Source of the DNA: Botryllus schlosseri
Lineage: Eukaryota
Reading direction: 5' to 3'
Assembly: GCA_051294905.1 (NCBI GenBank)
Contig: CM119385.1
Coordinates: 16,058,001 to 16,122,000 of the forward strand
Length of the DNA: 64,000 nt
The translations under genes and the position numbers were made by a program. The notes beneath the pieces are model-generated. The model ran no database searches. It was given only the letters and a program-made list of their open reading frames with translations, and was not told where the DNA came from. Shown piece after piece: positions 1,505-49,651 of the stretch (the first letter of the stretch is position 1; every line of letters begins with the position of its first letter).

Positions 1505-4500
1505 CGAAGAACGACTATACAGAAAGCTTCCCTGCCAAAATCAACGTTTTTACGAGACTTTCTGCCCCAGCATCAGTATCTATAACTCCAACAACCAACA
1601 ACATATCGATGGCGTGGGCACCAGTGGACAAAGTGCAACATTACGAAATCGTATACGCTGCCACAAAGCATCGCATGAAAGGTGCATTTGAAACTTATTT
1701 GCTTTAGGAGAATGTATAGTGATATAGGTACTTTTAGTAGTTTATGGAAGCATGGATCAAAGACCACGAGACCGCGACAAGAGAATAATAATTAGGGAAA
1801 TCAGTGTTTTCTATTTGTGTTGCAAAAGTACATGATAATAATTACCCGTGCTTTGTTTATCCAACAAGCTTGAACGTTTTGGTTGGATTTTCAAATAATG
1901 GACATAAAAATCGTTGGAGGATTTGATGCAAATTTTGCATCAGTCTTGTGTCAAATCAATCTTAATATATTTCATCTCCCAAGAAAAATGAATTAACTGG
2001 TATGTGATGCGGGACCGCAATTGATCCATCGATATCTTCAGTCGCCACCCAGCCGAGCATAAACTTAACAAATTGGAAGATGTAATTTAAAAAACAAATG
2101 AACACGAAATTCAGACAGTGAGACAGCTTATAAATGGACTCGAACCAAAGGTGTCTAACTTATGGCCCGTGTAATGCTAGCAAATGTAAAAATGTCGTTA
2201 TTATTCACCACATTTCTATCAAAAGTTGAGATTTGTAACAAGAATTACTTCGCGTAAATCATCCCCAAGACAGTTGCATATTTACTCTAGTCATTCGTAA
2301 TAACGAATCTGTGAGTCTGTGGCAATGTAGCCAAATTCAGAGAAAGTAAAAAAGTTCACACTGGAGGTTTCTGGAAAAATCATTCATGAGGTGTTTAATC
2401 ACAAAGACAAAATGCTAATGATAACCCGTTTTACATAAGAATATAATGCAGGTATCTGCGGACGCACCACTATATAACCAATATAACTTCTGATTCCAAA
2501 GGTTCCCCGGCCTTACAAAGCAATTGGGTGTATTCTAATGTGTACTTTCAAAGTATCGCAGGTAAAAAATTCTTCACATTTCCCACTTTCATTTGTGTGG
2601 TGAGTCGGTTCAGTAAGGCGCTTCAATGACCTTTTTTATGTCATGATGTGCAACTGACAAATCGCTTCTCAAAAGATTTGGTGTTCTAAACATAGAAGAT
2701 ATGAAGAAGCTAGAAATTGCCACGTTTATGTATCAAATCCATTGCGGTCAATGTCCCTCAAATTTCAACGACTACTTCACCTCGGAGTCAAAAGCGCACA
2801 AGTACAGCACACGCTCGTCAACGAAGAACAAATACCATATGATCAGGACGGAATACAAGAAAACGCATTGCTCTATCAAGTATGCCAGACCCCAATTGTG
2901 GAACAGCATCTCGCCGGCTATCCAACAGTCGTCGAGCATGTCCGCATTGAAGTCGAAATACAAGCATTTTCTTCTAAATCAGTGGTTCCCAACCTGGGGG
3001 CGTGTAAGCATCTGAAGGGGGGCGTGAAGAAGCGGTCAACTGATTTTTTTTAGTGCTCTGCGTCATTTTTACCTCAAATTCACGTGTGTTTCTCTATATA
3101 TAGACTAAATTTCATATTTTTCAATTCTCTTATCAACAGTCATAACCTTCCATGCCATGAAACAATCTGTTGGGGTTGCTAGCATCCTGGTTGGATTTTG
3201 TGATATGACGATAAGGGGGGCGCAAAATTTTTCACTATCACAAAGGGGGGCGTGGAACCACCGTTCTAAAGGAGTACTAGCCAGCCTTCAGGATTACCGG
3301 ACCACGACCTAACATCGACCTCGCCCTCCGTCACATGCCAACTCATTTTGTCGCTTGCGTCTTATATTCTCTGCATTACTTTTCACTTAGTGTGCATGCC
3401 TCTTCTTTACTTCGCCTATGCTAAGGTGGGTGTCTGATCTACTAGCTACTCCAAGTTGTTTCGATACCTTCCTATCTTTTCATTGTATCGCAGTCTTGTG
3501 ATGTTTTGAAATGATGAAAATATTAATTAACTGGTTGATTGATTGACCCAATATCGAGTTTTTGGGAAACCAAATTGTTATTTAATAATCATGAACAATG
3601 GTTAAAGAGTTCTGCGTTTATTGTTAAACCTCTTCTATTCCTAACTGCGCACACGTAGGGCCAAGACTGCATCACAAGGAAAGAGAGCATAAAAATATGC
3701 CTTTTTATATGACCATGAGCCTAGGTTAGAACCACTGCCTTAGTGGTGTACAGCAGTATTCAATCAGCAAATCATTGTATTTTTACCAATTACATCGATT
3801 TTGATTAAAGATACTTCTAGCATTAAGTCTGTGTAACCTGTGATATTCCATATTATGTATGGGCTTAAATAGCAGCATCCCACTGTAAAACAAAGGTATG
3901 GTCTTGGTGGTAAGGTTTTGGTATAATCTGACTGATCTAGGACGCAAACAATCAGTTGGTTTGAATACTGCCGCCTGTGACACAATTTGAGTTCGACACT
4001 ACTGATCTTCTGTACATGCTGACAAAACACAATGAGCAGTTAAGTTCGTCGGTTGCGTTTCCTCTACTGAAATTCAATATACCGGCCAACTAGATGTGTT
4101 TTGTATTTGTTAATGAATTCAGGAAGATACATTGTACAAATCTCATTAAGAAAATATGTCATCCTTTTGCACCACTTCAACTAAAGCCACCCTTAGATAT
4201 ATGGAGTTAACCAGGGCAAACAGATATATGTTCAAAAGTGATGCCGCAGTTTCTATTCACATCCTTAGGCCATGTCCATGGTATTTGAAATTTTAATGAG
4301 TACGCAATCATATTATCTAAAATTGTATAAAAATGAAGCCAATATTTTGGATTGCTTACTGTTTCAATGGCGGATATGCGTAGTCAGCATTAGGTATGCC
4401 GGCTCAACACCAATGGTTAGTGAGAGCCAGTCAAACAGCTTTTGGCTCCAATCCATGCTCATTTGCTCAACTGTCGGAGTCTCGTACTGGCTAGTCATTG

Positions 4501-34500: not shown

Positions 34501-37500
34501 TTTTATCAGTTGAATGATAACTTACCTGTAATACTATTAGTTATAATAGGAACGAACATGACACTGCCAATGCGAAGTTCTCTCTGTTGCCATATCGAGC
34601 CATATCGAACGATAGAATTTGTGATGCTATTATCTTTTATTTTGGATCATGGCAATTGCTTTTCCGACCAACGTAGACAAGTTTGAAGTTTTGACATTTC
34701 AGTAGAAACGTGTCCAGCATGAAATCAACGCACCAGCACTGTTGCTTACCAAAACACTCAGCTACAGATCAAATACGACACTATGAATATTCTGCTTGAT
34801 TAGAAGTAGTTATCCAAATATTTCTGATAGATCGAAGCTCTTTTTCAATTCATGTACTGACTCGCCTTAAACCTCGTCACTATTTCCAGTAGAAACACTA
34901 CGGTAAACAGTTTATTCATGCCGCAGGAGCAAATTCGACGTCTACATGAAATTCAACATGAAGCCGACCCCGGAAAGCTTCGATTTCAAATTCTCGCTGC
35001 CGCACGACATATGGGACGTCACAATGACCGAGGATCTCTTCAAAATCTTCATACCAGAGAAAGACGTCAAATCGACAGGAATGGTTTTCATCGGAATTCG
35101 CGACAAACGTAAGTAAGACTCTCTGTGCCAGACCAGAGTCGGTCAGAGTAGTAGCCTTGGTACCGATGTAGAAGTAGAATAATGTCTTCCCAATTACACA
35201 TACAAGCATATGCTCTGAACTCAGGTATGCTAAGTACGCCTGTACAAATTTAGTGAACGTGACGGCCACCGGCAGCGAGCACAGAGCCCGAGTACGGAGA
35301 CGTAGGTCGCTCGGCTCCGAGAACTCAACGACGTATCACATGCTGATATCGACGCCGGGATGTCGCAGATTTGACTCGGGCACGAAAAAATGGACCGGGG
35401 ACGGATGCCTGGTATGGTAGCGATCTTTATTTGTCGGTGTGTGCGTTTTCAAAATGTTGCCGATACTGTTCAAGTAGCGGCTTCCAATGTGGAGCGGAAC
35501 TATTGGATGTGAAGGTAGCATTTCCAAACGTTCTTTTGAGCAGCGCAGAAAGGTCAAGGTCATAGTTTTTTAATTTGCTGTGGCTGGTGTGAAAATAATG
35601 CCGCCGATCGTCGCCGCTGGTCATTACATCAGAATTGAAAAAGTGACGAGTAAATGTGTGTGCAATCGGGAACAGAATAGAGTCGTGAGCCATAGCTGCA
35701 ATTTTATTCTTATTGAGAATCCTACGGCACCTGAAACGTTCTACCATTACACAGCAATGCGTTTTCGCGACTGTAACAATTCAAATTTTAACTCCGCCCA
35801 ACACAGGTCAGCGAGCACAGCACGCCCGAGACCACCGAATGCGTGTGCAACAAGCTGTCGCCCACTTCGATATTCAGCGCCGAGTTTTTCGTGCCGCCGA
35901 ACACCATCAACTTTGCGACCGTGTTCGCCAAGATCAACATCGCCGACAACCCGGCCGTGTTTTCCACTGTGGTGTCGCTTTTGATTTTGTACATCTTGTT
36001 GACCGTGTGGGCTCGTAGGATGGACAAAACAGATAAGATTAAGGTGAGACATCTCGAGCGATTTTTGTGTACTTAAGATTTAGGCCATGCAGAGGTAGAC
36101 AAACTAGCCATAGTAGCTACTCAGCCAGAAGTAGAGGCGATAATTTCACAGACATTGTTTAAAGCTAATTCGATGGGAAGTGGAAAACGAAGATATCAAA
36201 AGTCTTCGACTAAGTGGCTTAGCTTAAAAATGTAGATATGTAAGAGAGTTGAATACTTATAGCAGTTAAATGTAGATGACCGAGTTTGAAATTGCGTAAT
36301 TCGTCTTCTCGACTAATTTAAAATGATTGATTACAACACAAATAGGTGCAATATTCAAAAGCACAGTCAGTTACTGGGATACGGGGCTATTTTCATGTTG
36401 GCATGATAATGTCACTCGTAAACACTGTGCAAAGATATCCCAAAACTAGTTTGTTCAGAAAATCCAAAGTGTAAATATTAAGTATTACTGCTTAAATAAA
36501 CGATATGCAGGAGTGAAAGTAGTCTACAACCTTAACCGTTTGAGTAGGTGGGGAAAGTGGGCAATACCTAGTTAAGTACTTCTAAAAAAGTAGAAGTACT
36601 TTGTTGCTGACCACCTCTGGGGTCAAGATTGGTGCGTATGTGAGAAAGAATGCAGCGAGCTTTCTTTCTGGCACTGTACCGGTCATATTTTGTAACTCTC
36701 CCCCATTTGTGACGCTGAGATCAGCAAAATGTGTCGCCTCATTTGTTCAGTGGGAACTGAAGTCGGTCGCCGACAATCGCAAAGAAGACCGGTACCTCTA
36801 CCAAGTCTCGGTTTTCACGGGCTACGGAAAGTGCGCCGGGACGCAGTCGAACGTGTTTTGCGTTTTATTTGGCGAAAACGGCAAGACCAGCCCCAGGCAA
36901 TTGCGGACGCGGGAAGTCAAGGTGAAGAAATTTACGTCGTATTACTGTACAGGAATGTCATTTCTATGAACAAGGGTAGCTTTCTGCTGTATATGGTGAA
37001 TGACGTGCTGCCTCGCTACCTTTCAAGGCTCCGGCAGTGGCAAGACAGAATTACAATGACAATTTCTGTTCATAATATAAGAAGGAGTCACAAATTACGT
37101 CACACCAACACAGTGAATCTATACACACAATCCTAGTTGCCCGATTTTTCAGCGCTATTGTGGATTGTTATTTTTCCATGGCAGACCCCGTTCGGCCGCA
37201 GCAGCGTCAATCATTTCTTGGTGCGAGTGGACAAGGCCCTTGGCGCGATGACTCATGTGCACGTATGGCACGATAACACGGGCAAAGGGGATAATCGCGG
37301 ATGGTATCTGGATCAAGTAGCGGTGCAAGACGTTCAGACAGGAGAGAGGTGTGTTATGAATAAATCTACGTGTAAAATGCGAAATGCGCTCCTTTATTCC
37401 TTAGTATGCCGTTGAAATTAGCGAATTTAATATATTAAAATCGTAATCTGTTTATGGATATGAGTTTCAAATCAAGTCCTATTCTGGCTATGACTTAAAT

Positions 37501-40500
37501 TTATCCGCATTGTTCTTTGTGACAGCAAACCTGTGATCCCTTTATGGTTTTCCGGTAGTTTTCACACCGGACACCAGGTTTTCCTGCTGCGAGCCTACCT
37601 ATTTTCGTAGGCTTTGGCTGGTTCTTGACTGCATATCGCTTGTCGGCGGCTGGTAGTTCTAGCGTGAGCAGCCGATACGATTTGAGCCTGGACCTGCACG
37701 CATTGAGAGACCAGCGCTCTGACCGCTAAGCTACAACGGTTGTCCTAAAATTAATTCATATGGTGTGTTTCTGCTAGGAAAATGTGCTTGCAGACATGGG
37801 ATTTTCTCAGATTTCATTCACTAAAAGTGTAATGTATCCTACATTTCTGCAAGTAATACATACTGTAAAACAAAACGATCAGGAATACACACACTACTCT
37901 ACTGAAGTAGATACTCAACAGATACTTATGACACTGCACATGATATTAGCCGTGATGGAGTCATTGGACAGGCCGATACACAAAATCAATAACCGACGCG
38001 GATACTTCCACAAGGACATATATCAGTCAGACTATAATCAGTCCGCCTCGGCCGCCGAAAGGCTCGTGTGTCAAAATCTGTATTGTCGTCTCCAAAGTAT
38101 TCCCTGTTTGAATATTCTTCCAGATACTACTTTATTTGTGACAACTGGCTGGCTGTCGATGAGGATGACGGCAAAGTCGACCGTATATTACCGGTCGCGA
38201 CCGCTGAAAACATGACCACCACCCACCGGCTGTTCCTCACCACGACCAGTCAGAAATTCACCGAGGACCATTTGTGGATATCTGTGAGAGCAAAATTGCG
38301 TACGCGAAAAATCTTGATTCCACAGCGAACATTAAACTGTTGCAGATATTTTATCGGCCGACCAAAAGCGACTTTACCAGGGTGCAGCGGCTGTCGTGCT
38401 GCGTGCTTTTGCTGTTTTTGACCATGATCGCGAACGCAATGTGGTTCGAAAGCGGGCAGCGGTCTGGGGCTAGCGCCACTTCGACTTTGAACGTGGGACC
38501 CTTTACGTAAGCGCCTCGACTCGAATCTGGCTGCTGATGTTCAGATACGATAAATATGGAATACGGAAAAGTTTAGTTCAAAATACCGGCTGACCTGAAA
38601 TTTCGTATATTTTCTTCTCTGCTACTGGTTACGTGACTATTTTTTGGCATTTCTTTTGGCAGAAACCAAAGCTTTGTCACCATACCTCAACTGATCATTT
38701 CTTTAAACACGAGCGAGTCTAATGGAGCCAATGCTATTTCACATCTATGATTGTACTTTAACCGAACTACTGGCGTCTTTGTTATTAGTACGGAAGTAAC
38801 GACATAACGTACTGATTTAAAAGTTCACGTCCAACCCCTTGTCGTAGGATTTCGCCGATACAGCTTTGGACAAGCTTCTGCAGCACACTGATGGTCGTGC
38901 CGGTCGTAACATTAGTTGTTACGCTGTTCAAGAAAGCGAAGACTAAAAAACAGGAGGAATTCGACATCAAAGCCAAGAGAAGGAGGGAGCGTGCGTTGCA
39001 AAAAATAAAACGCAAGTGTAGTTTTCTGTACCATCACGCCCATAGAACACTCTATTGAACACGGGAATCACCCTCAGACGTATGAAAAATATGTATTTAT
39101 GCAAGGGACAGGTGATGAATAAACTCACCTATCGTATTGAATGCAAAATTCACGTCTTACATTTGATCATAGAATTTCGACCATATAGCGTTGATCTCTG
39201 GTGGCACTGTTTTCAAATCTGTATTAACACAGGGCTGTGGAGTTGGAGTTTTGTGAATTTTCTCATGATGAAGTCAAACCAACCGAATCTTGTAACACCC
39301 TTCGGAGTTGGAGTTTGCGACTCTGAATTCCATCTACTCTAACATGAAACCAAATGTTCACAAATTCACTAAAAAAGTGTAGTTGCGGAAGTGAGCTAGT
39401 TCTTTAGGAACCTAATTTTTTTTGCAGGCACAATTTTCTTTAATACAGATAACATAGTTTGATACAAATTGTAATACTAATAACTAGAAATCAGGGTTGT
39501 AATGACTTGAGTCTTGATTTTCTGATGACTCGACCGGACTCCAGTCCTTTTATCAAAACACGGAAATGATTCGAGTTGATTTGTGTATCGACTCGACTTG
39601 GACTCGAGTCATTGCGCATGACTCGAACCAAGTCATATGACTCGAGACTCAGACAGCCAAGACCGACATTTCATTCTAATTCCGAAGAAAGGTAAAGTAA
39701 CCACACTATTGCGATTTCGTCTATTGGTACTGGTACTTGAAAATGCGAACAGAAACTGCTTAATGTGAGGAAAATGATTATATTATAAATGCGAACCATT
39801 CAATATCACCAAGTAGAGTTATAAAAAGTCGGTGTAACAAGACTTTAACTGGAAACAGAGCAGAGCGAGCAGTCAACGCAATGACTTGGAGTCGGACTCG
39901 AGTCATAACACCATGACTGGGACTCGACCTTCTGCTCGCTGACTTGGACTCGGTGGTGAATTGAAAATGACTCGAGTTGAAACTAAAAAAGTGAGATTGA
40001 CTTGTGACTCGGAGCCTTGTGACTTGGTTACAGCCCTGCTATAAATGTAATGAACATATAGTTTTCTGGGGATATTTACAAGACTGTTGAAGTCGACACT
40101 ACTAAGATAATAAAGTGAACCGACTCCACAGCCCTGACTGACACCAACATAAACCCTTACATCTCTCTCTCTCGTGCGCACTTCCAGTTGAACTGTAGTT
40201 ATTCTCAGGACGCCGACACGACAATGCATCCACTTTACCGAACCCCTCGGACATTATCGGAAAAGATGCAGTCTACACCATCGACGATACTGGCAAGATA
40301 GAGGCGAAAGCAAAGACGCAGCGAGTAGTGCCACCGCCGCCCAACACCTGGCCGCACAAATGCGTGTACGTCGCCTGGACGCTGGTCACTCTGGGTGTCC
40401 TACTGTCTGCGTTCTTTGCGATCCTGTACAGCTTCGAGTGGGGCCGAGAAAAGGCGGACCGGTGGCTGAGCAACATGATGCTGTCGTTTTGGCAGTCCGT

Positions 40501-43500
40501 GCTGATCGTGCAGCCAATCAAGGTGGGCAGGAAATTTGGGGTTTGTAGTTCGTTGTTGAGAAGAGCTTGCTATGAACTTGCCAACATTGATGGTGATTGT
40601 CAACTGTGTGCTTCGACAAAGCCTAGGTATGCAGAATCATACATGCCCTGAGCATTTGCAATTGGTGGACGGTGATATTGGAAAAGATAATACTTCTCGA
40701 TGAGGATAAGAAAGAACACTACACCTAAAATTTGTGACGATGTCCCGGTTTGTGATATTTAATGCGTTTCGTTTAGGTGATTATTTTGTCGCTGTTTGTG
40801 GCGATCGTTCTGAAAAAGCCAGACGAGCGTGTCATGGACTCGGTGCAGGACAGAGACGTGGAGGAGGCGGACAAAAAGTTTCTGGACGTTTGCGCGGAAA
40901 ATATCGGTGAGTCCCGTCAACCCGAGAATGGCTTTGCTTGCGTTTGACTCGGACGTTTCTTCTTTGATAAATACGTCAATGTTAGGATTGTGCAACTGCG
41001 ACTAGAACCTGACCGATGTTAAAAATTTGATGCTGATCTCACATATTTATCTACTATTAACCCTACAGAATCGATGTCAATCGTCGGATGATAATATTCT
41101 CCCCTAAAGTTACGACCCGATTTGAAATCAATTTCTTTTAGAATCGGAAATCCAACAAAACGAAATCGTTCCGCCGAAGCCGCCGAGTCGTAAACGCTTG
41201 CGTAGGACCAGAAAACTCCGAGCGAAAGAACGCGCCATGTCCGACATCGTGTGGGAAGTGATCGTGTACATGTTTTACATTTTGGTCCTGCTGTTCTTGT
41301 GCCACGGAAGCCGCGACTCCAAAGGGTTTCGTATCACAGACTCGATAAAAAAGACTTTCGTGGACCCAAAGTTCGGTTTACAGTCCGTGAGTATCGGTCG
41401 AATACCCAGCTTCACGTGCAGTCGGCAATAAATCAACGTATTCGACTGCTAGTGTTCAAAAATGGACGGTGCATTGCAGTTTTTCTTCCTGTACTGTTTC
41501 TATATAAGATTGTATTCTAAGTAGCTTACTTGCCTGTCAACCTACTTTATCAAATAAAAATACATGCTGTCCCGATCCACTATCATGAAAAGCTTACAGA
41601 GATGATAGTATTCTTCGCTGTATCTTCCTGAGTCGGTTGCAGAGATGCAAGCTGTCATTTTGCTATCATTTTAGGCTTTTGGTAAAAGTAATTTGGCGTC
41701 CCGATCTACCGACAAAGGGTATGCAGCATGCACACAATAACATTATTCTTTTTACGTCCCATTTGGTCACTCTATTCAGGTTGACAGGCTGTTGAGATTT
41801 TCAAAGAAACTGCATATACAATGCAGCAGTGCATAGTCAATTTTGCTCGTGGTGAAGCTAGTTGATATCAAAACGATCAAAACATAGCCCTCACTTGAAT
41901 CGGAAATATGTCCTTGCGGAGCTGCAGTGATCATTAAGCGTTCACACTGTCACAGGCACGACGTATTACACATTAACAATCGCAGGTCACGTCGGTCGAA
42001 TATTTCTGGAGATTCATGAACGTGACCTTGCTGCCGAACCTGTACCCGGTCGAATGGTACAACGGCAACAGAAAGACGTGGCGCGAAAGAAGCTTTCTCG
42101 TGGACGAGCAGTCGTATCGCGTCGGCCCGGCCCGACTGCGGCAAGTCAGAGTCGACCCGTGTAAGGGAATAGCTCTGTTTTTACATAGTCCTCGGTTAAT
42201 TTAAAATATTTTAAAAATATTGACTCCTTGATGAAACCAGTGATTTTCGAGTATAGGTGGTGATGATTTAAGACTTCTTCGACCATCGCTTGATAATTTT
42301 CATTTTTCAGGTAAAAGCTGAAGCTAGAATACATTTTACTTACTCAGAAATCGCAACTCTCTGGTTTTTCTTGAGTAGGAATTTATGACACTCTTTCTAC
42401 TTTTTCTTAACAGCTTTCAGTTTTTAAGATAAAATGAACCAAGAATATCTACTTTTTTACTTGAAAATTGCTATTTCTACTTGTACTCAAATGTAAATTT
42501 ACGCCGTTACTTTTACTCTTCTACTTTAACTTGAAAAAAATTTCCATTACTTATAGTTGATATATTCACTGAATGTGCACAGTTGAAATGTGTCCCCCTA
42601 CTCTGTGCCTTATACTGTGTCACGATTTTCAGCCGCATGCCCTCATAGTAGTCCCGGTCAAGAGGAATGCCGTCCGCACTACGCGTTATACCGCAACGAC
42701 GACTTGGACTACGAACCGGGCTGGGTCCAGTCCTCATTGTTGCCTCACGATCAAAGGACCGACGATGAAGACGTCGATGACTTTCTGGCAATGGCGTGGA
42801 AATATCGGTCGTGGATTGAATTGAAAGGCGTGCCCGTGCTGGGCGGGGTCACGGCGTATCCGGGAGGCGGATACTGTGCCGAGCTCGGAGTCAACTACGC
42901 GGTGAGGATTTACTCAGATTGTCATAGTGTTTTCTATAAAAGGAAGAAAATTGCTCTAAATTATGTTCCAAGTCTCTTCCGATTATTTTGTATTAGAATT
43001 TTAAATTGTAAGTGCGAAAGTTGCAAGTATATTCCTCGCTATTTGTCGTTTGGTTTAAGTCGTGAAGACGCATATTGCGATTTTGGAAACCATCGCCAGT
43101 GATTGACTATCAACACTTCGCGACGCCATGTCCCCTCTTGAAACTTACTTACTTGGGTAGTTTTTAAATGTTTCGTTTTATACCATTTACTTGAATTAGC
43201 TGGACATGTGATGATGATAGGTATTACTGCTCCTAGTTGATTACACTTGTACATGAAGTAGCTTGGCCTGTCTTGAGAACAGCAACTTGTAATTGAGTAC
43301 TTCTAAAGTAGCTTAATAAGCTTGGAATGAATTGAGAATAGCAGCTGCGTCTTCTTATTGAGTAATTCTACTTGGAGTCGAAGTAGTTGGCATGTCTTTA
43401 GAATAACTATTTCTCCTTTCAGTTGGGTACTTGTACTTTAAGTAGCCTGCCTGGATAATAGCTTCCTCTAACTCTAATCGAGTTCCTGGATCTCTGCTTG

Positions 43501-46500
43501 AAGTACCTTGACGTGTCTCGTGTATAGCTACTACTACTTCAAATCAGATAACAGTCCATTTGCTACAGTCTGGAAAGTTCATCGCGGATTCCTTGTACCG
43601 GGACGCGTGGATCGATCATCGCACCCGGGCGGTTTTCATCGAGTTCACCATTTACAATCCGAACGTGAATCTCTTCACGACGATCAATCTGATGGCGGAA
43701 TTTCCACCAGTGGGCGCCGCCATGCATTTCACGAACGTCGTCACGTTCCGGCTGTATCACTACATCGGCACGTACGGCACTTTGGTGGTTTTGGCCCAGG
43801 TATGGTGTTTTCAGTGGCAGTGTACAGCGGGTTTATGCGACCTTTTTGAAAAGCGGGCCAATAAACAGCACGCCATTAGCAAGCATTCTATGAATTGAAA
43901 GGTTCGTCATCTCGTAGGAATTGCATCTATATACAGTGTCATTGGTCAAAGCGACTATCTCCTAGCATAATTTCCTTTTCTGAAACTCACTTCAACTTCT
44001 ACTTCTAATTGAGTAACAATACTGACTACTTCGATCATCTGTGCTCAAATGAACAGCTCTGTTTCTGGATTTTCCTACTTCTACTGCCGAACTTTAGATT
44101 TGCCTTTAACCGGCAGGCGATCTTTGTAATCCATCTTCTCTACGCGACGTACAAGAGCATCAAGACGTTGATCGCGACAAAGAAGAAATTTGTCCAAGAT
44201 CTTTGGAATATTTTCGAAGCGATCATCCTGTTCTTCGACTGGACGATAGTCGGACTGACGGCTTTGCGGATGGTGCTTACGAATAAAACGATCGACTCTT
44301 TTCACGAAGATAAAAGTATGGTTTAAAAGCAATGTGACTTAATGTAAAATCCGTGATTTAATCTCATCAAAAGCTTCGTCTGAATATTTTTAAACATTCA
44401 AGTAAGCCGAATCTATATCAAGAATCGATGATATATTGCAGCAATGGAGAGCCAAAAACTAGTAAAAGACTTGGATTCTAACTTTACGTCCATCTCTAAT
44501 TGAGCTTTACTAGCAATGGGATGTATCCAAATTCATGGAAACACCAGGCTCTAAGCCATAGCCGGCAATTGTTGCATATTTGATAGGGTTGAATATTATT
44601 AGGGAATCATTTCAAGTCATTGCTTATATCTGTAATGCAACACGTCTTTACCTTATGCGTGATTGTGATTGCCTGGCATTGAAGCACCCCATTTTATAAC
44701 CCAAATCTTGCCCGAATCTTACCCATAGCCCCAACCTAAAGTTAGCGTTAACCCACATGCTATAGTGTAGCGTGCTCACGTGCCTACCAGGGAAAAGCAC
44801 ATATTGGGATGTACATCTAGTTTGTGAAGTTGTATTTGGATGTTGATTTTCTATCAATTTATAGTTTTCATACGACTTAATAGAATTTCAGACTCGAACT
44901 CAATCTCTGATGTCCACAGACCCTCACTCACAGTGGTGGCTTTTGGGGTGGGCGAAGTGGGCGGTCGCCCGGGGCCCCCTCTTTGGTTAGTAGAGGTAGT
45001 TTTGATGTATAGTCTATTATTGCATATAATAGATATGACCTGTTCCAGCGCCTGGCTCAAACCTTCACGTGGTGTGCTGGCTCATTACTAATGACAGCCG
45101 ATAGCTTTCCAGATTAGTGTGGGTCTATTTAGCCTGCAGCAGTTTTATCGCTATTTCACGTTACGTGCCATACATCTTCAGCATGAAAGCATTAGCTATA
45201 GTTAACTGGTTCACTTTTTTTTTTATAATTTTACAATGTATGATAAAAGTAGGCTCAGGAGTTTAAAGCAGTTCAATATTCCAGCCTGTTTCAATGCCGT
45301 GTTCTTATGTCAAATACACATCAAGTAATCTCATATCATATGGTTCACTAATAGTGAGTTGGTGACAATAGATGCGCAAGGGGGGTCTGCCCCCCAGAAG
45401 CTGCGATTACATACTTATAGGGGCCATCCGGAAGTCTCGCCCAGCCCCCCCCCCAATCATAGGGCCACCACTGCTCACTCATATCATGACTGTAGATCAC
45501 ATCGCAGATGCATATTCCTAGGAAAATACGTCAACTTTCAACAAGTCACCGCCGTCGACACGATGGTCGGATACTTCCTGGCGCTGTCCGCGTTCATGGG
45601 CATGCTGAGATTTCTGAAGCTGCTCCGTTTCAACAAGAGAATCGGAATGCTGTCGTCTGTGCTGAAATACAGTGCGCGGCAGTGGCCCGGGTACTTTGTG
45701 CTGGCGGCCGTGTTCTTCATCTCGTTCATCCACGTCGGGTGAGTAATTAGAGATGCCGTCAGTCTAGCAGCATCGCTGGAGCGAGCTTGTCGTTTTGAGT
45801 TACCTTCTTTTACTTTTCATTCAGTGTACACGCCTCCTCTTTACATCTCCTGCCCTAGACCAAGATTGGTGTCTGATCTGAAAGACTACTCCAAGTCGTT
45901 TTGACACCTTCCTATCTCTTGATTGAACCACAGTTTTGTGGTGTTTTCAAATGATGAAATTCCTAATGAACTGATATTTTTACTGTTATTGATATTCTTC
46001 CGATTATCTTAAAATCTGGATTTCATCCCCAACTTGGCAGACAAAAATAATTCTTAAATATGCATTGCAATAATATATTCAAATTCATATATTCAATAGA
46101 TTTCAAGTAAACAATCGTCCGCAAATGTGAAATTTCAATAACTCATGTACAATTTCTTATAATTCATGACTTACCGACTATTGCCCGTGAAAGTTCTCCG
46201 ACCCAAATAGACGCTACAAAATTAGTCTTTGATACATCATATTATCTGACATAATCCGCAATTAGGCCTATATAGACATAACTTTTGTTTATGCTTAGGT
46301 AGTTAGGCACCATGTTCTCATGTCACGTATTCAAATGTCGACAGGAGTAGCATTTGATTCGGAAGGTTGTTGCTCCAGCATGGCATCTTTGCATGTCACT
46401 ATATAAGCAAGTCATTCCCTGCGAATGGCATTCTGTGGCCTTCTTGAAATGTATAGTTAGTCTTGTGTCCAGTGCTTTCCAACCTTTTTCAGTTTGCAAC

Positions 46501-49070
46501 CTACTTTTGATGCTAGTTTTATTGTGCGGCCCACTGCGAGATATTACTACGAAAAACAAATTAATAAGAAAAGAAACAATCTATACTCATAAAATTTGCT
46601 ATTTATGCGAAAAATGTGATTGCGTATTAGAAATACCTAAAATTGAGGACGGCCTACAGATATTTTCGACCAACCGCCACGTGCAACTGCTATCATACCA
46701 ATTAGAAGATTGCTGGAATTCCATAACCATCAAAAGCAGCTACCTCTATGACATATTGAATAGAAAATTGTAACATTTAGATATGTTTTTCGACCCACAT
46801 AAAATAGCTTCGCGGCCCACCCACTGGTTGGAAAGCACTGCCTTACACCGTGCTATAAGGGTTGCCTCAATTGGCGAAAGACATAGAATATGCTGTGCTG
46901 AGGCCTTAATTTATACTGTCATTTTCAGATACGTCGTATTTTCTCCGTTTCTTGAAAGTTACAGCACCTTGATCTCGACGGCCGAGTCCATGATTAACAC
47001 CATGGTCGGTGGGTATTTAAATTTTCGCGTTTCAGACGCCTGTCTGCCTCAATAACTACACTATTTACGTATCACAGGCGGAGAGGGATACCCCGAACTG
47101 CGTGACACTTACAGATTCTTCGGTCCCGTGTTCTACTTTGTGTTCTGTTTCAATGCGCTGTTCATCGTACTGAATGTGTTGATCGCGATTATCGGCGAGT
47201 CGCACAAGCAGACCAACGGCGATCTCGCAAAGGCAAGCAACCAATACGAGATGATCGACTTTATGACGAAGAGATTTCTGAAATGGACCGGCATGCAACG
47301 ATACGTCGGGAATAAACAGAGTGAGAGCTTTTCTGTTTTCTGGGATTGTTATGCGTCGGAGGATGTCTGTCGTTTAGTCGTCAGATTTTGAAGTTTTCCA
47401 ACTGCCGTGCACGACTGCAGTTATTGACAGATCTAGAGTAGAAAAAACGCTTTTATACCTGGCTTATAGAGCTGGACACTATGATTTGAGTACTTGAAAC
47501 TGAATTGTCTTTAACAACCGAAGTCGAATAGTGAGACACGATTTTTTCAAGTACTTAAATTAGATGCCCCTTCATACTGAGACTTTCATTATTACTAAGA
47601 ATTATAGCATCAGTATTTTTTCCCAACATGGAATCTGTGAAACTTCAATTGGACGTATCACAGCCTCCAAAACATGACATTTCCATGACTTCGTTATCAG
47701 TATCAGTTATTGTTAATAAATGTTTCATATCAAAACACCACAAGACTGCGATGCAATGAAAAGATAGGAAGTTCATCATCATTGGTTTATTAGCAATTTT
47801 ATCAGTTCAATACACCACAAAAATGCGATACAATGAAAAGACAGGAAGATGTCGAAGCGACAAGGAGTAGTCTATGGAATCTGACACCCACCTGTTGCCG
47901 AAACGAATTGGAGTAGTCTGTGAGATCAGACACCCACCTGGGCATAGGCGATGACGCAATCGCATGCACATTGGATGGAAAGAAATGAAGGAAAACTAGC
48001 AGTATTGCTGCAAAGTGAAATGAAATAAGCATAGTCGAAGAAATGCCAAAATTATCCCTATGTGTTGTAGAACTAGAATTATATCCTGTGTGAAATCAGT
48101 AAAATCAATTTTCCATTGCAACAGAGACCGGGCCGGCTGCAGAAAATCATGTAGTGCCGTCAAGTCCTACCGGAGACACTTCTGCAGGTCTGCAATATTT
48201 CACATACTAAAATTTGTTGCACTTATCGCTAGACGTGACAATTTTTGGTAGTGCCGAGTGAGGAAAGAGCGGCAAATTCGGAAGAAGCTAAAATGAAGAG
48301 TTTCCTGGATATTCAGAAACGGTTCGACGCTTACTCCTACGAGTTGGAGACGAAGTACAAGAAGTTGCTATCGTTCGACGAATTGAGATCGGAAGTTATT
48401 GCGCAGGTACCTTTCGGTTTGACCCATGGGCTAATGTACATTGCGCTCTAGCCTGATGGTTTGAGTGCAAACCTGGCCTGAATCCAAAGGCCTGATAAAC
48501 GTAGGAAAATACTTGAAATATTGTCAATTTTGGTCAATTGCTCGTAAATTTTTCGTCACAACCATGCCATTCTGACACAAATTATATCACTCGCAAGTGC
48601 TACTTGCGTTCCTGTTAATTTCGAGCGCTCATTCCCGAATTAACTGAATGCTGATATTTCACTCGGTCTATATAGTAAAACTGCCCATATGTGTTGATGC
48701 TCGGTCGCCTCGGTACTTTGGAATTTGAACCAGGGCTTTGGGTGAGCGAAATGTTGAACCAATCTGGCTCCAGAGTTTTCTTTTTACATGAACTAGCTTC
48801 AATGTACCGACCGAGAACCGCTTCCATTTCCAGATGAAAGCGGACGTTGAAGAGCAAAAGCAGAAAGCGGAAGCACGTAAGAACAAAACCCTAACCGCGG
48901 CCAGGATTTATGCGAACGTAGCTTATTTTTCAGTATGTCCCGAAACGCAGAATCGCGAACAGCCTTCAACAAGCAGAGGACGCTCCTCTGCCTACCGCAC
49001 GTCTCACCTCACAACGGTGAGCGGGCCATCCAACGACAAGGCTTCACTTTTCTCGGCTAAGAAGTCATGA
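1505..49070 (+). CDS. Polycystin-1-like (PKD1/PKD1L/REJ family) 11-TM receptor-channel subunit; multi-exon, 5' end incomplete
   Basis: Exons read by hand: (1475 or)1505-1681, 4658-4804, 4862-4955, 5169-5335, 5397-5490, 6697-6825, 7940-8181, 8797-8978, 9042-9144, 9514-9625, 9687-9844, 10581-10734, 11886-12001, 12063-12204, 12270-12421, 12901-13007, 13064-13168, 14365-14500, 16168-16385, 17488-17601, 17670-17845, 19152-19293, 19446-19566, 21644-21839, 21894-22034, 22721-22927, 24523-24722, 25465-25517, 26540-26747, 26814-26928, 27945-28101, 28577-28742, 28930-29039, 29197-29326, 29383-29579, 30281-30412, 30500-30625, 31038-31202, 31503-31622, 31684-31818, 33024-33147, 34046-34202, 34927-35108, 35254-35411, 35807-36043, 36751-36921, 37185-37348, 38124-38283, 38346-38506, 38848-39011, 40209-40522, 40777-40906, 41142-41386, 41986-42160, 42633-42901, 43569-43799, 44117-44315, 45522-45738, 46929-47008, 47078-47320, 48252-48406, 48834-49070 (TGA). 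Total 10,019 nt = 2 + 3,339 codons, and every intron phase matches. Family motifs: REJ 'GGNMRTVGYERVVTFDASSLSHDPD', GPS 'C..F.....W...GC...CVC', PLAT 'YQVSVFTG...AGT..NV...WHDNTG..GWYL', 'DFTRVQRLSCC', TOP 'YPGGGY', 'WIDHRTRAVFIEFTIYNPNVNLF', S4 'RFLKLLRFNKRI', S6 'LNVLIAII'. Confidence 0.95.
2657..3545 (+). mobile_element. 5'-truncated LINE 3' end (CR1/L2 group), interrupted by a MITE
   Basis: Reads LLKRFGVLNIEDMKKLEIATFMY...SIKYARPQLWNSI...KSKYKHFLL, typical of the ORF2 C-terminus after RT. It is followed by a 3' UTR shared with 27640-27905 and a (TTGA)n tail. Confidence 0.8.
2980..3263. mobile_element. hAT-type MITE inserted in the LINE
   Basis: TIR CAGTGGTTCC / GGAACCACCG; TSD TTCTAAAT/TTCTAAAG; internal sequence shared with 54431-54661. 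Confidence 0.85.
5676..6035. mobile_element. hAT-type MITE (TAGGG ends)
   Basis: Ends TAGGGTTGTT / AATAGCCCTA; perfect TSD GTATGCAT; related fragments near 430 and 28123. Confidence 0.8.
7217..7438. mobile_element. hAT-type MITE
   Basis: Ends CAGGGTTTCTCA / TGAGAGCCCCTG; perfect TSD ATTTAGAG. Confidence 0.85.
11264..11748. mobile_element. GACTCGAGTC-rich hAT MITE, older copy
   Basis: Ends CAGGATTGTAA / TTACAACTCTG; TSD GGAAGTAG/AAAAGTAG (2 mismatches). Confidence 0.7.
13597..14154. mobile_element. GACTCGAGTC-rich hAT MITE
   Basis: TIR CAGGGTTGTAA / TTACAACCCTG; perfect TSD CCGCACAC. Confidence 0.92.
15050..15798. mobile_element. hAT (Charlie/Buster-like) non-autonomous element
   Basis: Ends CAGAAGTGTCAAAC / GTTTGACAACCCTG; subterminal GCGGGCCG motifs; perfect TSD GTCTAATG. 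Confidence 0.88.
16168..17511 (+). other. PAN/Apple domain 1 of the PKD1-like protein
   Basis: SACSDDFHLFPSTQL...LTLDECKDLCCSIRMFKCRSISLHRETSDCALYAEDRNT...YYNHYERK shows typical PAN Cys spacing and the terminal YYxxYE motif. Confidence 0.85.
17161..17410 (+). mobile_element. Penelope-like 3' fragment with a short inverted terminal piece; hammerhead degenerate
   Basis: 17203-17410 matches the reverse complement of about 23990-24200; 17161-17202 is an inverted copy of the repeat end. The core reads CTGACGA...GATA and the GGGT stem strand is deleted. Confidence 0.7.
17512..19293 (+). other. PKD-like Ig domain preceding the REJ module
   Basis: 'VEWDLGEG' resembles WDFGDG, followed by 'HVYDMNSVYIVRANVSD' (H-x-Y...Y-x-V-x-x-x-V-S). 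Confidence 0.6.
17932..18908. mobile_element. hAT-type non-autonomous element with GTGAAC subterminal repeats
   Basis: TIR TAGGGATGGTGTGAAC / GTTCACACCATCCCTA; perfect TSD ATGGATAT. Confidence 0.92.
19694..21085 (-). mobile_element. hAT deletion derivative retaining an N-terminal zinc-finger remnant
   Basis: TIR CAGGGTTGCCAT / ATGGCAACCCTG; perfect TSD TATATAAG; repeated AAATAAGGAC subterminal motif. The minus-strand ORF 'ICNCDISL...ISTHIDTPKHKK' resembles the C2H2 finger at the start of hAT transposases. Another left end occurs at 60883. Confidence 0.88.
23370..23888. mobile_element. Degenerate copy of the 15050-15798 family
   Basis: Shares the right end 'gcgggccggat...gtttgacacccctg' and internal 'aaatgtgctggataat'; the left end is eroded. 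Confidence 0.65.
23972..24440 (-). mobile_element. Penelope-like retroelement 3' fragment (GIY-YIG C-terminus plus terminal repeat)
   Basis: Minus-strand frames read 'SAIGKHLSDNSACAKNYRDDRFRILRKGRSHFH' and, frameshifted, 'FIFKIHQPRLCQQKEFVYHL'. This is recognised from memory as the C-terminal part of PLE GIY-YIG endonucleases. A terminal repeat with a hammerhead motif follows. Confidence 0.75.
24004..24037 (-). ncRNA. Minimal type I hammerhead ribozyme motif, intact core
   Basis: Minus strand ACCC-CUGACGA-GUGUCAGCC-GAAA-AUAUUC-GGGU: stem I ACCC/GGGU, core CUGANGA and GAAA, palindromic AAUAUU stem III, predicted UUC cleavage site. Confidence 0.7.
25603..26386. mobile_element. hAT-type non-autonomous element
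   Basis: Ends CAGGGGTGGCCAACC / GGTTGGCCACACCTG; perfect TSD GACTAGAT. Confidence 0.88.
26420..26510 (-). repeat. Solo Penelope terminal-repeat fragment; hammerhead degenerate
   Basis: ACCC CTGACGA GTGTCAGCC GAATATATCT GGGT: A15.1 and the cleavage triplet are altered. Confidence 0.7.
26814..28070 (+). other. PAN/Apple domain 2, nested inside the REJ module
   Basis: KSCQKFRMFPQ...ITESECSRKCCLTREFLCLSFTYNARKSNCSLFSEDRKTLEPDMYYDYFE aligns by eye with PAN domain 1. Confidence 0.85.
27260..27910 (+). mobile_element. Second LINE 3' end of the same family
   Basis: ETALKPLQKLQ...KPLLKRFGVLNIKDMRKLEIAKFMY..., then the same 3' UTR, AATAAA and a TTGAACT-like tail. Confidence 0.8.
29197..35900 (+). 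other. GAIN domain with a degenerate GPS motif
   Basis: Helical subdomain exons, then the beta region 'VMSFDDNPLGF...INSPVTML', then GPS 'PGCRRFDSGTKKWTGDGCLVSEHSTPETTECVCNKLSPTSIFSAEFFVPPNTINF'. Confidence 0.85.
31957..32519. mobile_element. GACTCGAGTC-rich hAT MITE
   Basis: TIR CAGGGTTGTAA / TTACAACCCTG; perfect TSD CTGTACGT; collinear with 13597-14154. Confidence 0.92.
36090..36619. repeat. Representative of a dispersed, old AAGTAG/CTACTT-rich element family
   Basis: Ends CAGAGGTAG / CCACCTCTG. Similar AAGTAG/TACTTGAGTA-rich tracts lie near 11040-11260, 29700-30045, 42200-42550, 43140-43540, 52540-53150, 54830-54960 and 57715-57870. Confidence 0.45.
36751..38200 (+). other. PLAT/LH2 domain
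   Basis: 'RYLYQVSVFTGYGKCAGTQSNVFCVLFGENG...FGRSSVNHF...VWHDNTGKGDNRGWYLDQVAV...YYFICDNWLAVDEDDGKVDRILPV'. Confidence 0.93.
37500..37740 (-). mobile_element. tRNA-derived SINE (degenerate); 3' extent approximate
   Basis: Minus strand 'ccgttgTAGCTTAGCGGtcagagcgctggtctc...caGGCTCAAATCgtatcgg': A-box at 37723-37733 and a degenerate B-box at 37679-37688; no complete cloverleaf. Confidence 0.6.
39230..40136. mobile_element. Older MITE (CAGGGCTGTGGAGT ends) hosting the 39492-40038 insertion
   Basis: Ends CAGGGCTGTGGAGTTGG / CCGACTCCACAGCCCTG; TSD not clean; related fragment near 56910-57030. Confidence 0.6.
39492..40038. mobile_element. GACTCGAGTC-rich hAT MITE (opposite orientation)
   Basis: Ends CAGGGTTGTAA / TTACAGCCCTG; TSD CTAGAAAT/CTATAAAT. 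Confidence 0.88.
45795..45970 (+). repeat. 3' UTR fragment of the same LINE family
   Basis: Shares 'gtgtctgatct..aagactactcc..gtcgttt..acaccttcctatct' with the two longer copies. Confidence 0.7.
46470..46840. mobile_element. MITE with a 15-bp perfect TIR
   Basis: CAGTGCTTTCCAACC / GGTTGGAAAGCACTG; no matching TSD seen. Confidence 0.7.
47715..47975 (-). repeat. Reverse-oriented LINE 3' UTR fragments with an internal duplication
   Basis: Reverse complement of the same UTR; the blocks 'caccacaa.a.tgcgat.caatgaaaaga.aggaag' and 'ggagtagtct...ga.acccacct' each occur twice. Confidence 0.65.
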
Positions 49071-49651
49071 TCGCTCTCGGATAGCATCGGTGTAGTGTGG
49101 GTTGGCGAAGCTTTGATGTCGCTGTGTTTTTTGTGAAGCTTGTGCGACTTTTTATTCAAAGAAAAATGTGTGACGTATGTGAAAAATATAGTTTCCATGT
49201 AGTAAGCTTGGTCTGCTTGTTGGGTTCGTCGAGTAGCTAGTATATTGTGTGCAGGCCTTTTCACACAGCCCGATCAAGGGTAGGTGGTCTTCAAGTTTCA
49301 CCCAGACAGGTTTTAAAAGCACCCAGTTCTCGACAGCGAAACATTGCAGGATCACATCTGCGAATAGTTGATGACTAATTTACCGACCGCCTATATGGTG
49401 TTGCAATGCATCAGAACTCTCATGAGGTTAACCAGTTGTTATGAAGTGCTCCGTACATCATACTGCTGTTGGTTAGGATTACATGACTAATTATTCCAAA
49501 TCAACCTGATAGAGATTTCACTACCGTAGGGGGTTTTCACGCCTCAAACTAACATAAACTGGGCAGTCCGATTGAAGCTTCGCTTCAGACATATTGGTTT
49601 TTCTGCTCAACCAAAATCACTCCTTGTGAGGCTGGCTGGTATTCTCTGGTA

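What the first reader, a model, noticed from the sequence alone, without database searches (positions are those of the whole stretch)
1505..49070. Polycystin-1-like receptor with an unusual ectodomain: FN3 x8-9, PAN, PKD, REJ(+PAN), GAIN
Seen: an intact ORF of at least 3,338 aa with the full 11-TM PC1 scaffold. Established: vertebrate PKD1/PKD1L and sea-urchin REJ proteins carry LRR, WSC, C-type lectin, SUEL, EGF or PKD repeats in front of REJ. Inference: a long FN3 stalk plus two PAN/Apple ligand-binding modules is a combination I do not recognise in this family. It may be a lineage-specific sensory, mechanosensory or gamete receptor. No PKD2 partner is in this window.
Basis: partly seen in the sequence, partly recalled or inferred. 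Interest (0 to 1): 0.72.

Follow-up and report, generated by a model that had tools for sequence, protein, structure and literature searches.

The report
Polycystin-1-like receptor with FN3 stalk
This is a real, intact and transcribed gene for a giant polycystin-1-type membrane receptor whose outer part is built from 15 fibronectin-III repeats and two PAN/apple modules, a combination I found in no paper; it is a new variant of a family already known for swapping its outer domains.

Summary
My splice model has 75 exons, all GT-AG, with no stop or frameshift. It encodes 3,935 aa, starts with a signal peptide 15.9 kb upstream of the window, and ends at window 49070.

Domain order:
- signal peptide
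- 15 FN3 repeats (8 complete in the window, 7 upstream)
- PAN-1
- one PKD-like Ig domain (motif level only)
- REJ with PAN-2 inserted
- GPS-like motif (His replaced by Lys)
- TM1, PLAT, TM2-5
- polycystin/TOP domain and a six-helix TRPP channel half

Exon-level Pfam hits confirm FN3, PAN_1, REJ, PLAT, Polycystin_dom and PKD_channel.

Spliced contigs from public runs join the last FN3 exon to the PAN-1 exon. They also join PKD exons to each other and to the first REJ exon.

A related organism carries a collinear orthologue of exons 61-71, and the PAN-1 exon is conserved in other samples.

Five other REJ loci in this genome show no FN3 or PAN upstream. No paper found places FN3 or PAN on a PKD1-family protein.

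Earlier scan notes report other polycystin-like receptors with unusual ectodomains elsewhere in this genome, but not this architecture.

Verdict: new variant of a known kind; function untested.

The parts
1505..14500 (+). Exons 15-31: last strand of FN3-7 and FN3 repeats 8-15. Each repeat is split into 2-3 exons, and every repeat border is a phase-1 intron.
   Evidence: Pfam fn3 on exon 16 (E 1.6e-8). Leave-one-out HMM E-values of 4e-5 to 5e-20 for all 15 repeats. FN3-HMM hits fall only in model exons. Intron phases.
16168..16385 (+). Exon 32: PAN/apple module 1, six Cys, a complete domain in one exon.
   Evidence: Pfam PAN_1 at 25.6 bits against a cut-off of 21.4. Spliced contig joint 14500->16168/16170 links it to the last FN3 exon. 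96% and 79% identical in P0025/P0026 with the same donor border. The AF2 model is weak (pLDDT 62) and its best-probability fold matches are apple/PAN proteins, not significant.
17488..19293 (+). Exons 33-35: a single PKD-like Ig domain (WDLGEG ... HVYDMNSVYIVRANV) with a Cys-containing insert.
   Evidence: Motif level only; no Pfam hit on single exons. Joint 17601->17670 seen in a spliced contig. An alternative acceptor at 19107 is possible.
19446..29579 (+). Exons 36-48: REJ module.
   Evidence: Collinear Pfam REJ hits on exons 37, 38, 39, 40, 42 and 46, at profile positions 29-89, 90-131, 146-208, 210-248, 261-325 and 381-411. Joint 19293->19446 seen in a spliced contig.
26814..28101 (+). 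Exons 43-44: PAN/apple module 2, inserted in REJ between profile positions 325 and 381. The two exons total 272 nt, so skipping them would break the frame.
   Evidence: Pfam PAN_1 at 26.9 bits on exon 44. Same six-Cys spacing as PAN-1 (alignment). Phases.
30281..35108 (+). Exons 49-56: region between REJ and GPS, presumed GAIN subdomains. Predicted exons only.
   Evidence: Open, frame-consistent GT-AG chain. No Pfam hit.
35254..36043 (+). Exons 57-58: polybasic RVRRRR|S, a GPS-like motif (GC...W...GC...CVCNKLS, with Lys in place of the catalytic His), then TM1.
   Evidence: Read directly from the translation. No Pfam GPS hit. TM1 hydropathy 2.33.
36751..38283 (+). Exons 59-61: PLAT/LH2 domain in the first cytoplasmic loop.
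   Evidence: Pfam PLAT on exons 59 and 60, at profile positions 1-32 and 44-93.
38346..41386 (+). Exons 62-66: TM2-TM6.
   Evidence: Hydropathy peaks. Exon borders matched by the orthologous contig L005.
41986..43799 (+). Exons 67-69: polycystin (TOP) domain.
   Evidence: Pfam Polycystin_dom collinear at 5-55, 70-132 and 143-199. PDB hits to PKD2, PKD2L1, PKD1L3 and PKD1.
44117..47320 (+). Exons 70-73: S2-S6 of the TRPP-type channel half.
   Evidence: Pfam PKD_channel at 16-79, 82-150 and 183-223. S6 aligns without gaps to PKD2 S6.
48252..49070 (+). Exons 74-75: charged, heptad-like C-terminal tail and the stop codon. The 3' end is uncertain.
   Evidence: ORF chain. No AATAAA/ATTAAA within 3 kb downstream.

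Best explanation
What it is (shown). One gene of about 65 kb, with 75 exons, encodes a 3,935-aa member of the polycystin-1 (PKD1-like/REJ) family. After a signal peptide, the ectodomain is a chain of 15 canonical FN3 domains. These are followed by a PAN/apple module, one PKD-like Ig domain, and a REJ module that carries a second PAN/apple module. A GAIN-like region then ends in a GPS-like motif. The membrane part is the standard PC1 scaffold: TM1, cytoplasmic PLAT, TM2-5, then a six-helix TRPP-type channel half with a TOP domain.

How it arose (inferred). Phase-1 FN3 cassettes were added and amplified onto a PC1 paralogue in this lineage.

How it works (inferred). It is the receptor subunit of a polycystin complex and probably assembles with a PKD2-type channel such as the one at G000:C12:18.71 Mb. 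The FN3 chain, roughly 50 nm if extended, would play the role that the 16 PKD repeats play in vertebrate PC1: a long, force-bearing beta-sandwich tether. The PAN modules are the likely ligand or matrix contacts. Because the GPS lacks the catalytic His, self-cleavage is probably lost. A furin-type site about 45 residues upstream could provide a cut instead.
For: Intactness:
- Intact ORF across 75 GT-AG exons.

Domains:
- Exon-level Pfam hits for fn3, PAN_1 (twice), REJ (six collinear exons), PLAT, Polycystin_dom and PKD_channel.
- 11 TM helices plus a signal peptide.

FN3 array as part of one gene:
- All 15 FN3 repeats recognise each other.
- There are no stray FN3 exons in introns or on the other strand.
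- Every FN3 border is a phase-1 intron with a T-K/R-L junction.
- Exon 15 starts inside FN3-7, so the window part cannot stand alone.
- PAN-1 (218 nt) and PAN-2 (272 nt) are not multiples of 3, so both are needed to keep the frame.

Transcription:
- Spliced contigs show 14500->16168, 17601->17670 and 19293->19446.

Conservation:
- A collinear orthologue covers exons 61-71 at 50-93% aa identity.
- The PAN-1 exon is conserved at 96% and 79%.

Channel half:
- S6 and TOP match PKD2, PKD2L1, PKD1L3 and PKD1 structures.
- A PKD2-like locus exists elsewhere in the genome.
Against: - Only three of 74 junctions are seen in RNA-derived contigs, at low depth, and the runs' RNA status is a guess.
- The PAN-1->PKD junction (16385->17488) and all upstream junctions are unobserved.
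- The PKD domain and GAIN/GPS have no profile support at exon level.
- The spliced protein could not be submitted to any tool, so there is no whole-protein domain scan, fold or phylogeny.
- The start codon and signal peptide rest on my own gene model.
- The 3' end is uncertain, with no poly(A) signal within 3 kb.
- Partner, ligand, tissue and cleavage are all inferred.
Confidence: 0.75

Rival explanations
1. There are two transcription units, or a dominant short isoform. A secreted FN3x15-PAN protein would end by read-through after exon 32, where a stop lies at 16428-16430. A separate PKD-REJ-channel gene would lie downstream. On this view the fusion is an artefact of my model.
For: The junction 16385->17488 was not seen in any contig. 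Reading through the exon-32 donor reaches a stop after 14 codons. Depth over the exons is very low.
Against: Exon 33 and the following exons have no ATG plus signal peptide of their own. Phases fit exactly across exons 31-32-33. A contig starting at 17486 carries the two bases AG before exon 33, as expected from the end of exon 32, but this is only 2 nt. A PC1-type ectodomain needs a signal peptide, and only exon 1 supplies one.
Confidence: 0.08
2. The gene is real, but the architecture is not special. It would be one of many lineage-specific, exon-shuffled ectodomain variants of PC1 paralogues. Similar FN3- or PAN-bearing PC1 proteins would already sit unnoticed in automatic annotations of related animals.
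For: PKD1-family ectodomains are known to vary widely, and SpREJ7 has a split REJ (PMC1934368). Earlier scan notes list other odd polycystin-like ectodomains in this same genome. FN3 units are phase-1 cassettes, the classic shuffling module. At least five other REJ loci are in the genome.
Against: No paper found describes it. None of the five other REJ loci has FN3 or PAN hits within 20-40 kb upstream. The available libraries hold almost no animal proteomes, so this cannot be settled here.
Confidence: 0.35
3. It is a decaying or silent pseudogene, or an assembly chimera.
For: RNA signal is very low. The GPS His is lost.
Against: An 11.8-kb ORF stays open over 75 exons with all GT-AG introns. 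Spliced contigs exist. Orthologous exons are conserved at 50-93% aa identity with identical exon borders. The repeat periodicity continues smoothly across the window edge.
Confidence: 0.03

Closest known systems
Vertebrate polycystin-1 (PKD1) and PKD1L1/PKD1L2/PKD1L3/PKDREJ
   Same: REJ module, GPS-type motif before TM1, cytoplasmic PLAT, 11 TM helices, TOP domain and a TRPP-like last six helices, and a long tandem beta-sandwich ectodomain.
   Different: Human PC1 uses LRR, WSC, C-type lectin, LDL-A and 16 PKD repeats (PMC3677617). Here there are 15 canonical FN3 domains, two PAN modules and only one PKD-like domain. The GPS has Lys in place of His. The S6 exon matches PKD2/PKD2L1 structures, but not human PC1, at E <= 0.1.
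Sea-urchin receptor for egg jelly proteins (SpREJ1-10)
   Same: Invertebrate PKD1-family paralogues with variable ectodomains. SpREJ3 and SpREJ4 have 11 TM helices. SpREJ7 has a REJ domain split by 428 non-REJ residues, a precedent for an insertion in REJ (PMC1934368).
   Different: SpREJ ectodomains carry C-type lectin, EGF, SUEL, PKD and WSC modules. No canonical FN3 array and no PAN are listed. Here the insert in REJ is an identifiable PAN domain.
FN3-like folds hidden inside the REJ module of human PC1
   Same: FN3-type beta-sandwiches are already thought to be part of PC1 mechanics (PMC3677617).
   Different: Those are cryptic, divergent folds inside REJ. Here 15 sequence-canonical FN3 domains (Pfam fn3; W/Y/LxPxTxY signature) lie N-terminal to REJ.
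PAN/apple modules of HGF/plasminogen N domains, factor XI/prekallikrein and apicomplexan microneme lectins
   Same: Pfam PAN_1 above the cut-off and a six-Cys pattern. The weak fold matches with the best probability are SML-2 apple domains and HGF NK1.
   Different: These are found on soluble proteases, growth factors or adhesins. I found no report of them on a polycystin scaffold.

Membership tests
Polycystin-1 (PKD1-like/REJ) family | REJ domain in the ectodomain | tested here: met
   Pfam PF02010 hits on six exons, collinear over profile positions 29-411. Three reach the 25-bit cut-off on their own.
Polycystin-1 (PKD1-like/REJ) family | GAIN/GPS immediately before TM1, with the HL|T autoproteolysis site | tested here: inconclusive
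   The four-Cys plus Trp GPS pattern is present directly before TM1. There is no Pfam GPS/GAIN hit on single exons, and the site reads KL|S, so the catalytic His is absent.
Polycystin-1 (PKD1-like/REJ) family | PLAT/LH2 domain in the loop after TM1 | tested here: met
   Pfam PF01477 on exons 59 and 60, at profile positions 1-32 and 44-93.
Polycystin-1 (PKD1-like/REJ) family | 11 TM helices, the last six homologous to TRPP channels, with a TOP domain | tested here: met
   Hydropathy. Pfam Polycystin_dom and PKD_channel, collinear. PDB hits to PKD2, PKD2L1, PKD1L3 and PKD1.
Polycystin-1 (PKD1-like/REJ) family | C-terminal coiled coil and assembly with a PKD2-type subunit | not testable with these tools
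   The tail looks heptad-like and charged by eye. A PKD2-like locus exists at C12:18707790-18708377. No binding or co-expression test was run.
Fibronectin type III domain | About 90-aa beta-sandwich with conserved Trp (strand B), Tyr (strand C) and the LxPxTxY motif, matching Pfam fn3 | tested here: met
   fn3 at 31.9 bits on the single-exon repeat and 35.1 bits on a half repeat, against a cut-off of 25. All 15 repeats score E 4e-5 to 5e-20 against an HMM built from the other 14.
PAN/apple domain | Match to Pfam PAN_1 and the conserved Cys pattern around a helix packed on a beta-sheet | tested here: met
   PAN_1 at 25.6 and 26.9 bits against a cut-off of 21.4. Six Cys at the same spacing in both modules. 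The AF2 model gives strand-helix-strand-strand but at low confidence, and the fold search is not significant.
PKD (Ig-like) domain, PF00801 | Profile match, with the WDFGDG and HxYxxxGxYxVxLxV signature | tested here: inconclusive
   The signature is visible (WDLGEG; HVYDMNSVYIVRANV), but there is no Pfam hit on exons 33, 34 or 35 taken singly. The spliced domain could not be submitted.

The most novel reading that the evidence does not exclude
This lineage has rebuilt the force-bearing ectodomain of a polycystin-1 from different parts. It uses 15 FN3 domains where vertebrates use 16 PKD repeats, and adds two PAN ligand-binding modules. It has also given up GPS self-cleavage (His to Lys) in favour of a furin-type cut just upstream. 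If so, it would be a natural PC1 that signals without the classical tethered-agonist exposure, and a ready-made test of whether stalk mechanics or GPS cleavage is what matters for polycystin function.
Probability: 0.2. Interest if true: 0.6.

Novelty: new variant of a known kind. Interest (0 to 1): 0.4.

Why it matters
What polycystin-1 senses, and how its huge ectodomain couples to the channel, is still open. A paralogue keeps the whole REJ-GPS-PLAT-channel core but replaces the PKD-repeat chain with FN3 domains, adds PAN modules and lacks the GPS His. That is a natural domain-swap experiment: it says the core tolerates, and perhaps only needs, a generic extensible beta-sandwich tether. It also adds a clear case of phase-1 cassette shuffling onto an ion-channel receptor. 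The value is comparative and hypothesis-generating, because nothing here shows a new mechanism.

Tried and rejected
1. The search of protein representatives with the TOP-domain exon returned only 24 hits, nearly all exon-sized fragments. The library holds hardly any animal proteomes, so I obtained no full-length homologues, no phylogeny and no architecture survey.

2. The search for homologous proteins with the REJ/PAN-2 segment and with the last FN3 exon found nothing. The PAN-1 segment gave two fragments, but their contigs could not be fetched.

3. My first ab initio exon chains dropped FN3 half-exons and read through short in-frame introns. I replaced them with an anchor-guided chain and hand-checked the splice sites at 9625/9687, 12001, 22927 and 30412/30500, and the new exon at -194..-87.

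4. A candidate FN3 half-exon at window 146-241 was rejected: it has no usable splice sites, and the real exon lies upstream.

5. An optional 66-nt exon at 44920-44985 was rejected, because the orthologous contig aligns exons 70 and 71 contiguously.

6. Exon 64 against the PDB gave only chance hits to viral polymerases. Exon 71 gave none.

7. Pfam on ORFs upstream of the predicted start and on ORFs at 49-64 kb gave nothing, so the neighbouring genes were not identified.

The species stays undetermined.

9. The AF2 model of PAN-1 was weak (pLDDT 62) and Foldseek found no significant match.
Full report
**Location and setting.** The window is G000:C15:16058001-16122000 (+ strand) of a 495.5-Mb assembly. 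It holds no N runs. GC is about 40-45% throughout.

**Building the gene model.** The + strand between 1.5 and 49 kb is full of short open segments with recognisable FN3, REJ, GPS, PLAT and polycystin-channel strings. No tool here predicts eukaryotic genes, and no spliced protein can be handed to the tools. I therefore built the model myself.

- I used a dynamic-programming exon chainer with codon-usage and splice-site scores trained on the locus.
- I then guided it with anchors in the evidently coding segments.
- I checked doubtful splice sites by eye on the DNA.

**The gene extends beyond the window.** Exon 15 (window 1505-1681) begins with the last strand of one FN3 domain and the start of the next, so the gene cannot start in the window. 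I fetched 20 kb upstream (L003, L004). It contains seven more FN3 repeats on the same strand, and an ATG followed by a typical signal peptide (MLNTACIIIFLVWCPLHVTCG) at window coordinate -15890, which is L003:4110.

**The final model.** It has 75 exons and 74 introns, all GT-AG. Median intron length is 400 nt, 20 introns are under 100 nt, and the largest is 9.3 kb. The coding sequence is 11,808 nt, encoding 3,935 aa, with the stop at window 49068-49070.

**Domains confirmed by Pfam on single exons in frame**:

| Domain | Exons and result |
|---|---|
| fn3 | Complete match on the one FN3 encoded by a single exon (L004:8485-8757, 31.9 bits); half-domain exon 16 (35.1 bits); weaker hits on other halves |
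| PAN_1 | Exon 32 (25.6 bits) and exon 44 (26.9 bits), against a cut-off of 21.4 |
| REJ | Exons 37, 38, 39, 40, 42 and 46, strictly collinear at profile positions 29-89, 90-131, 146-208, 210-248, 261-325 and 381-411 |
| PLAT | Exons 59 and 60 |
| Polycystin_dom | Exons 67-69, at profile positions 5-55, 70-132 and 143-199 |
| PKD_channel | Exons 70, 71 and 73 |

- The second PAN module (exons 43-44) therefore lies inside REJ, between profile positions 325 and 381.
- Hydropathy gives the signal peptide and ten strong helices. With the charged S4, that makes the 11-TM PC1 layout, with PLAT after TM1.
- The TOP and S6 exons match solved PKD2, PKD2L1, PKD1L3 and PKD1 chains. S6 aligns without gaps to PKD2 S6.

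**Two claimed parts are weaker.**

- *PKD domain (exons 33-35).* It shows the WDLGEG and HVY...YIVRANV signature, but gave no Pfam hit exon by exon.
- *GAIN/GPS.* It is seen only as the Cys/Trp pattern GC...W...GC...CVCNKLS directly before TM1, with Lys where the catalytic His of HL|T should be.
- A polybasic RVRRRR|S lies about 45 residues upstream. Similar sites lie at residues 35 and 2460.

**The FN3 array.**

- The spliced protein shows 15 consecutive repeats of 81-116 aa, each joined to the next by a T-K/R-L junction created by a split codon.
- In a leave-one-out test, each repeat scored E 4e-5 to 5e-20 against an HMM built from the other 14.
- The HMM of all 15 repeats, searched over every open segment of both strands of the 84-kb region, hit only model exons. 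It hit nothing in introns, on the minus strand or upstream of exon 2.
- All repeat borders are phase-1 introns, the classic shuffling cassette.
- The PAN-1 exon (218 nt) and the two PAN-2 exons (272 nt) are not multiples of three, so each is required to keep the frame.

**Is it one transcript?** Only one read-laying run of up to 6 kb was allowed, so I laid four runs on window 14000-19990. Low-depth contigs from two runs are spliced, and so derive from RNA.

| Junction | What it joins | Detail |
|---|---|---|
| 14500 -> 16168 | Last FN3 exon to PAN-1 | Reported as 14500 -> 16170 with two letters between, one a polymorphism; GT..AG; run X2 |
| 17601 -> 17670 | PKD exons 33 to 34 | GT..AG; run X3 |
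| 19293 -> 19446 | PKD exon 35 to the first REJ exon | GT..AG; run X3 |

The junction PAN-1 to PKD (16385 -> 17488) was not covered. The downstream part has no start codon or signal peptide of its own, and the phases fit, so I rate a separate-gene reading at about 8%.

**Conservation.**

- A 7.6-kb Logan contig from another organism (L005, SRR23343704) is collinear with exons 61-71 at 50-93% amino-acid identity, with the same exon borders.
- Two ORF fragments from another sample carry the PAN-1 exon at 96% and 79% identity. Both run into an intron at the same donor.

**Family context in this genome.**

- Pfam REJ and Polycystin_dom searches of the whole assembly find at least five other REJ loci: C11 27.07 Mb, a tandem pair at C11 19.24-19.26 Mb, C16 5.97-6.0 Mb, C1 5.89 Mb and C13 4.34 Mb.
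- They also find a strong PKD2-like locus at C12:18707790-18708377, in a 902-aa uninterrupted frame.
- None lies in the window.
- I fetched 7-40 kb on the 5' side of each of the five and scanned them with my FN3 and PAN HMMs. There was no hit below E 0.08, against 30 hits at this locus. The FN3/PAN ectodomain therefore looks specific to this paralogue.

**Literature.**

- Searches for polycystin/REJ together with FN3 or PAN, and for PKD1-family genes in lancelets, returned nothing describing this design.
- The survey of the ten sea-urchin REJ proteins and five human PKD1 proteins lists C-type lectin, EGF, SUEL, PKD repeats, WSC, REJ, GPS, PLAT and coiled coil. It notes that SpREJ7 has a split REJ (PMC1934368).
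- Work on human PC1 describes cryptic FN3-like folds inside REJ and 16 PKD repeats that act as mechanical elements (PMC3677617).
- A canonical N-terminal FN3 array and PAN modules are therefore, as far as I could check, a new ectodomain variant of a family already known for variable ectodomains.
- Earlier scan notes report other polycystin-like receptors with odd ectodomains in this same genome. That lowers the surprise.

**Mechanism (inferred, not shown).** The protein should sit in the plasma or ciliary membrane with a very long, glycosylated ectodomain (38 N-x-S/T sequons).

- The FN3 chain would act as an extensible tether, as the PKD repeats do in vertebrate PC1.
- The PAN modules would be binding sites.
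- The channel half would co-assemble with a PKD2-type subunit.
- With Lys for His at the GPS, autoproteolysis is probably lost, and the nearby furin-type site may substitute.

**What I could not do.**

- A whole-protein domain scan, fold prediction or phylogeny.
- An architecture survey of animal proteomes.
- Tissue or cell-type assignment.
- Identification of the species.
- Characterisation of the 49-64 kb part of the window.

Noticed in passing
window 412-777: A repeat of about 350 bp has more than 70 copies at 85-92% identity across the genome. Many copies lie as adjacent pairs in opposite orientation, which suggests a foldback or MITE-like element.
   Followed up: no
window 2647-3050 and 27249-27773: Two related open segments, probably derived from transposable elements (...LLKRFGVLNI.DM.KLEIA.FMYQ...), lie in introns 15 and 43 of the gene. 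The second gave no Pfam hit.
   Followed up: partly
window 35254-35875: The GPS reads CVCNKL|S, with Lys in place of the catalytic His, and RVRRRR|S lies about 45 residues upstream. Further furin-like sites are at model residues 35 (KRTKR, just after the signal peptide) and 2460 (KKRVRR).
   Followed up: partly
G000:C12:18707790-18708377: This is the strongest Polycystin_dom match in the genome (E 9.6e-63). It lies in an uninterrupted 902-aa open frame, apparently an intronless PKD2-type gene and the obvious candidate partner.
   Followed up: no
G000:C11:19237463-19261176: A tandem pair of REJ + polycystin-domain genes has very long open frames (830-895 aa) around the channel part, unlike the finely split gene in this window.
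   Followed up: no
window 49071-52070: There is no AATAAA or ATTAAA within 3 kb after the stop codon at 49068-49070. Early model runs proposed alternative last exons at 49255-50165. The 3' end of the gene is not settled.
   Followed up: partly
window 19107 vs 19152; 44920-44985: An alternative in-phase acceptor 45 nt upstream of exon 35 would add 15 residues. A 66-nt in-frame candidate exon between exons 70 and 71 is not supported by the orthologous contig.
   Followed up: partly
window 13516-14230, 31894-32540; L003/L004 (window coordinates -7911..-7500 and -3816..-3600): Similar repeated open strings (...TRVKSSHF..., ...SRVESFS.HHRV.SESKS...) recur in several introns of the gene. They look like an intronic repeat family.
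   Followed up: no
window 14000-19990: Most contigs and reads of the same species label are only 95-99% identical to the window, which points to a highly polymorphic species. Intronic repeats at 17.0-17.4 and 17.8-18.9 kb are very abundant in RNA-derived contigs.
   Followed up: no
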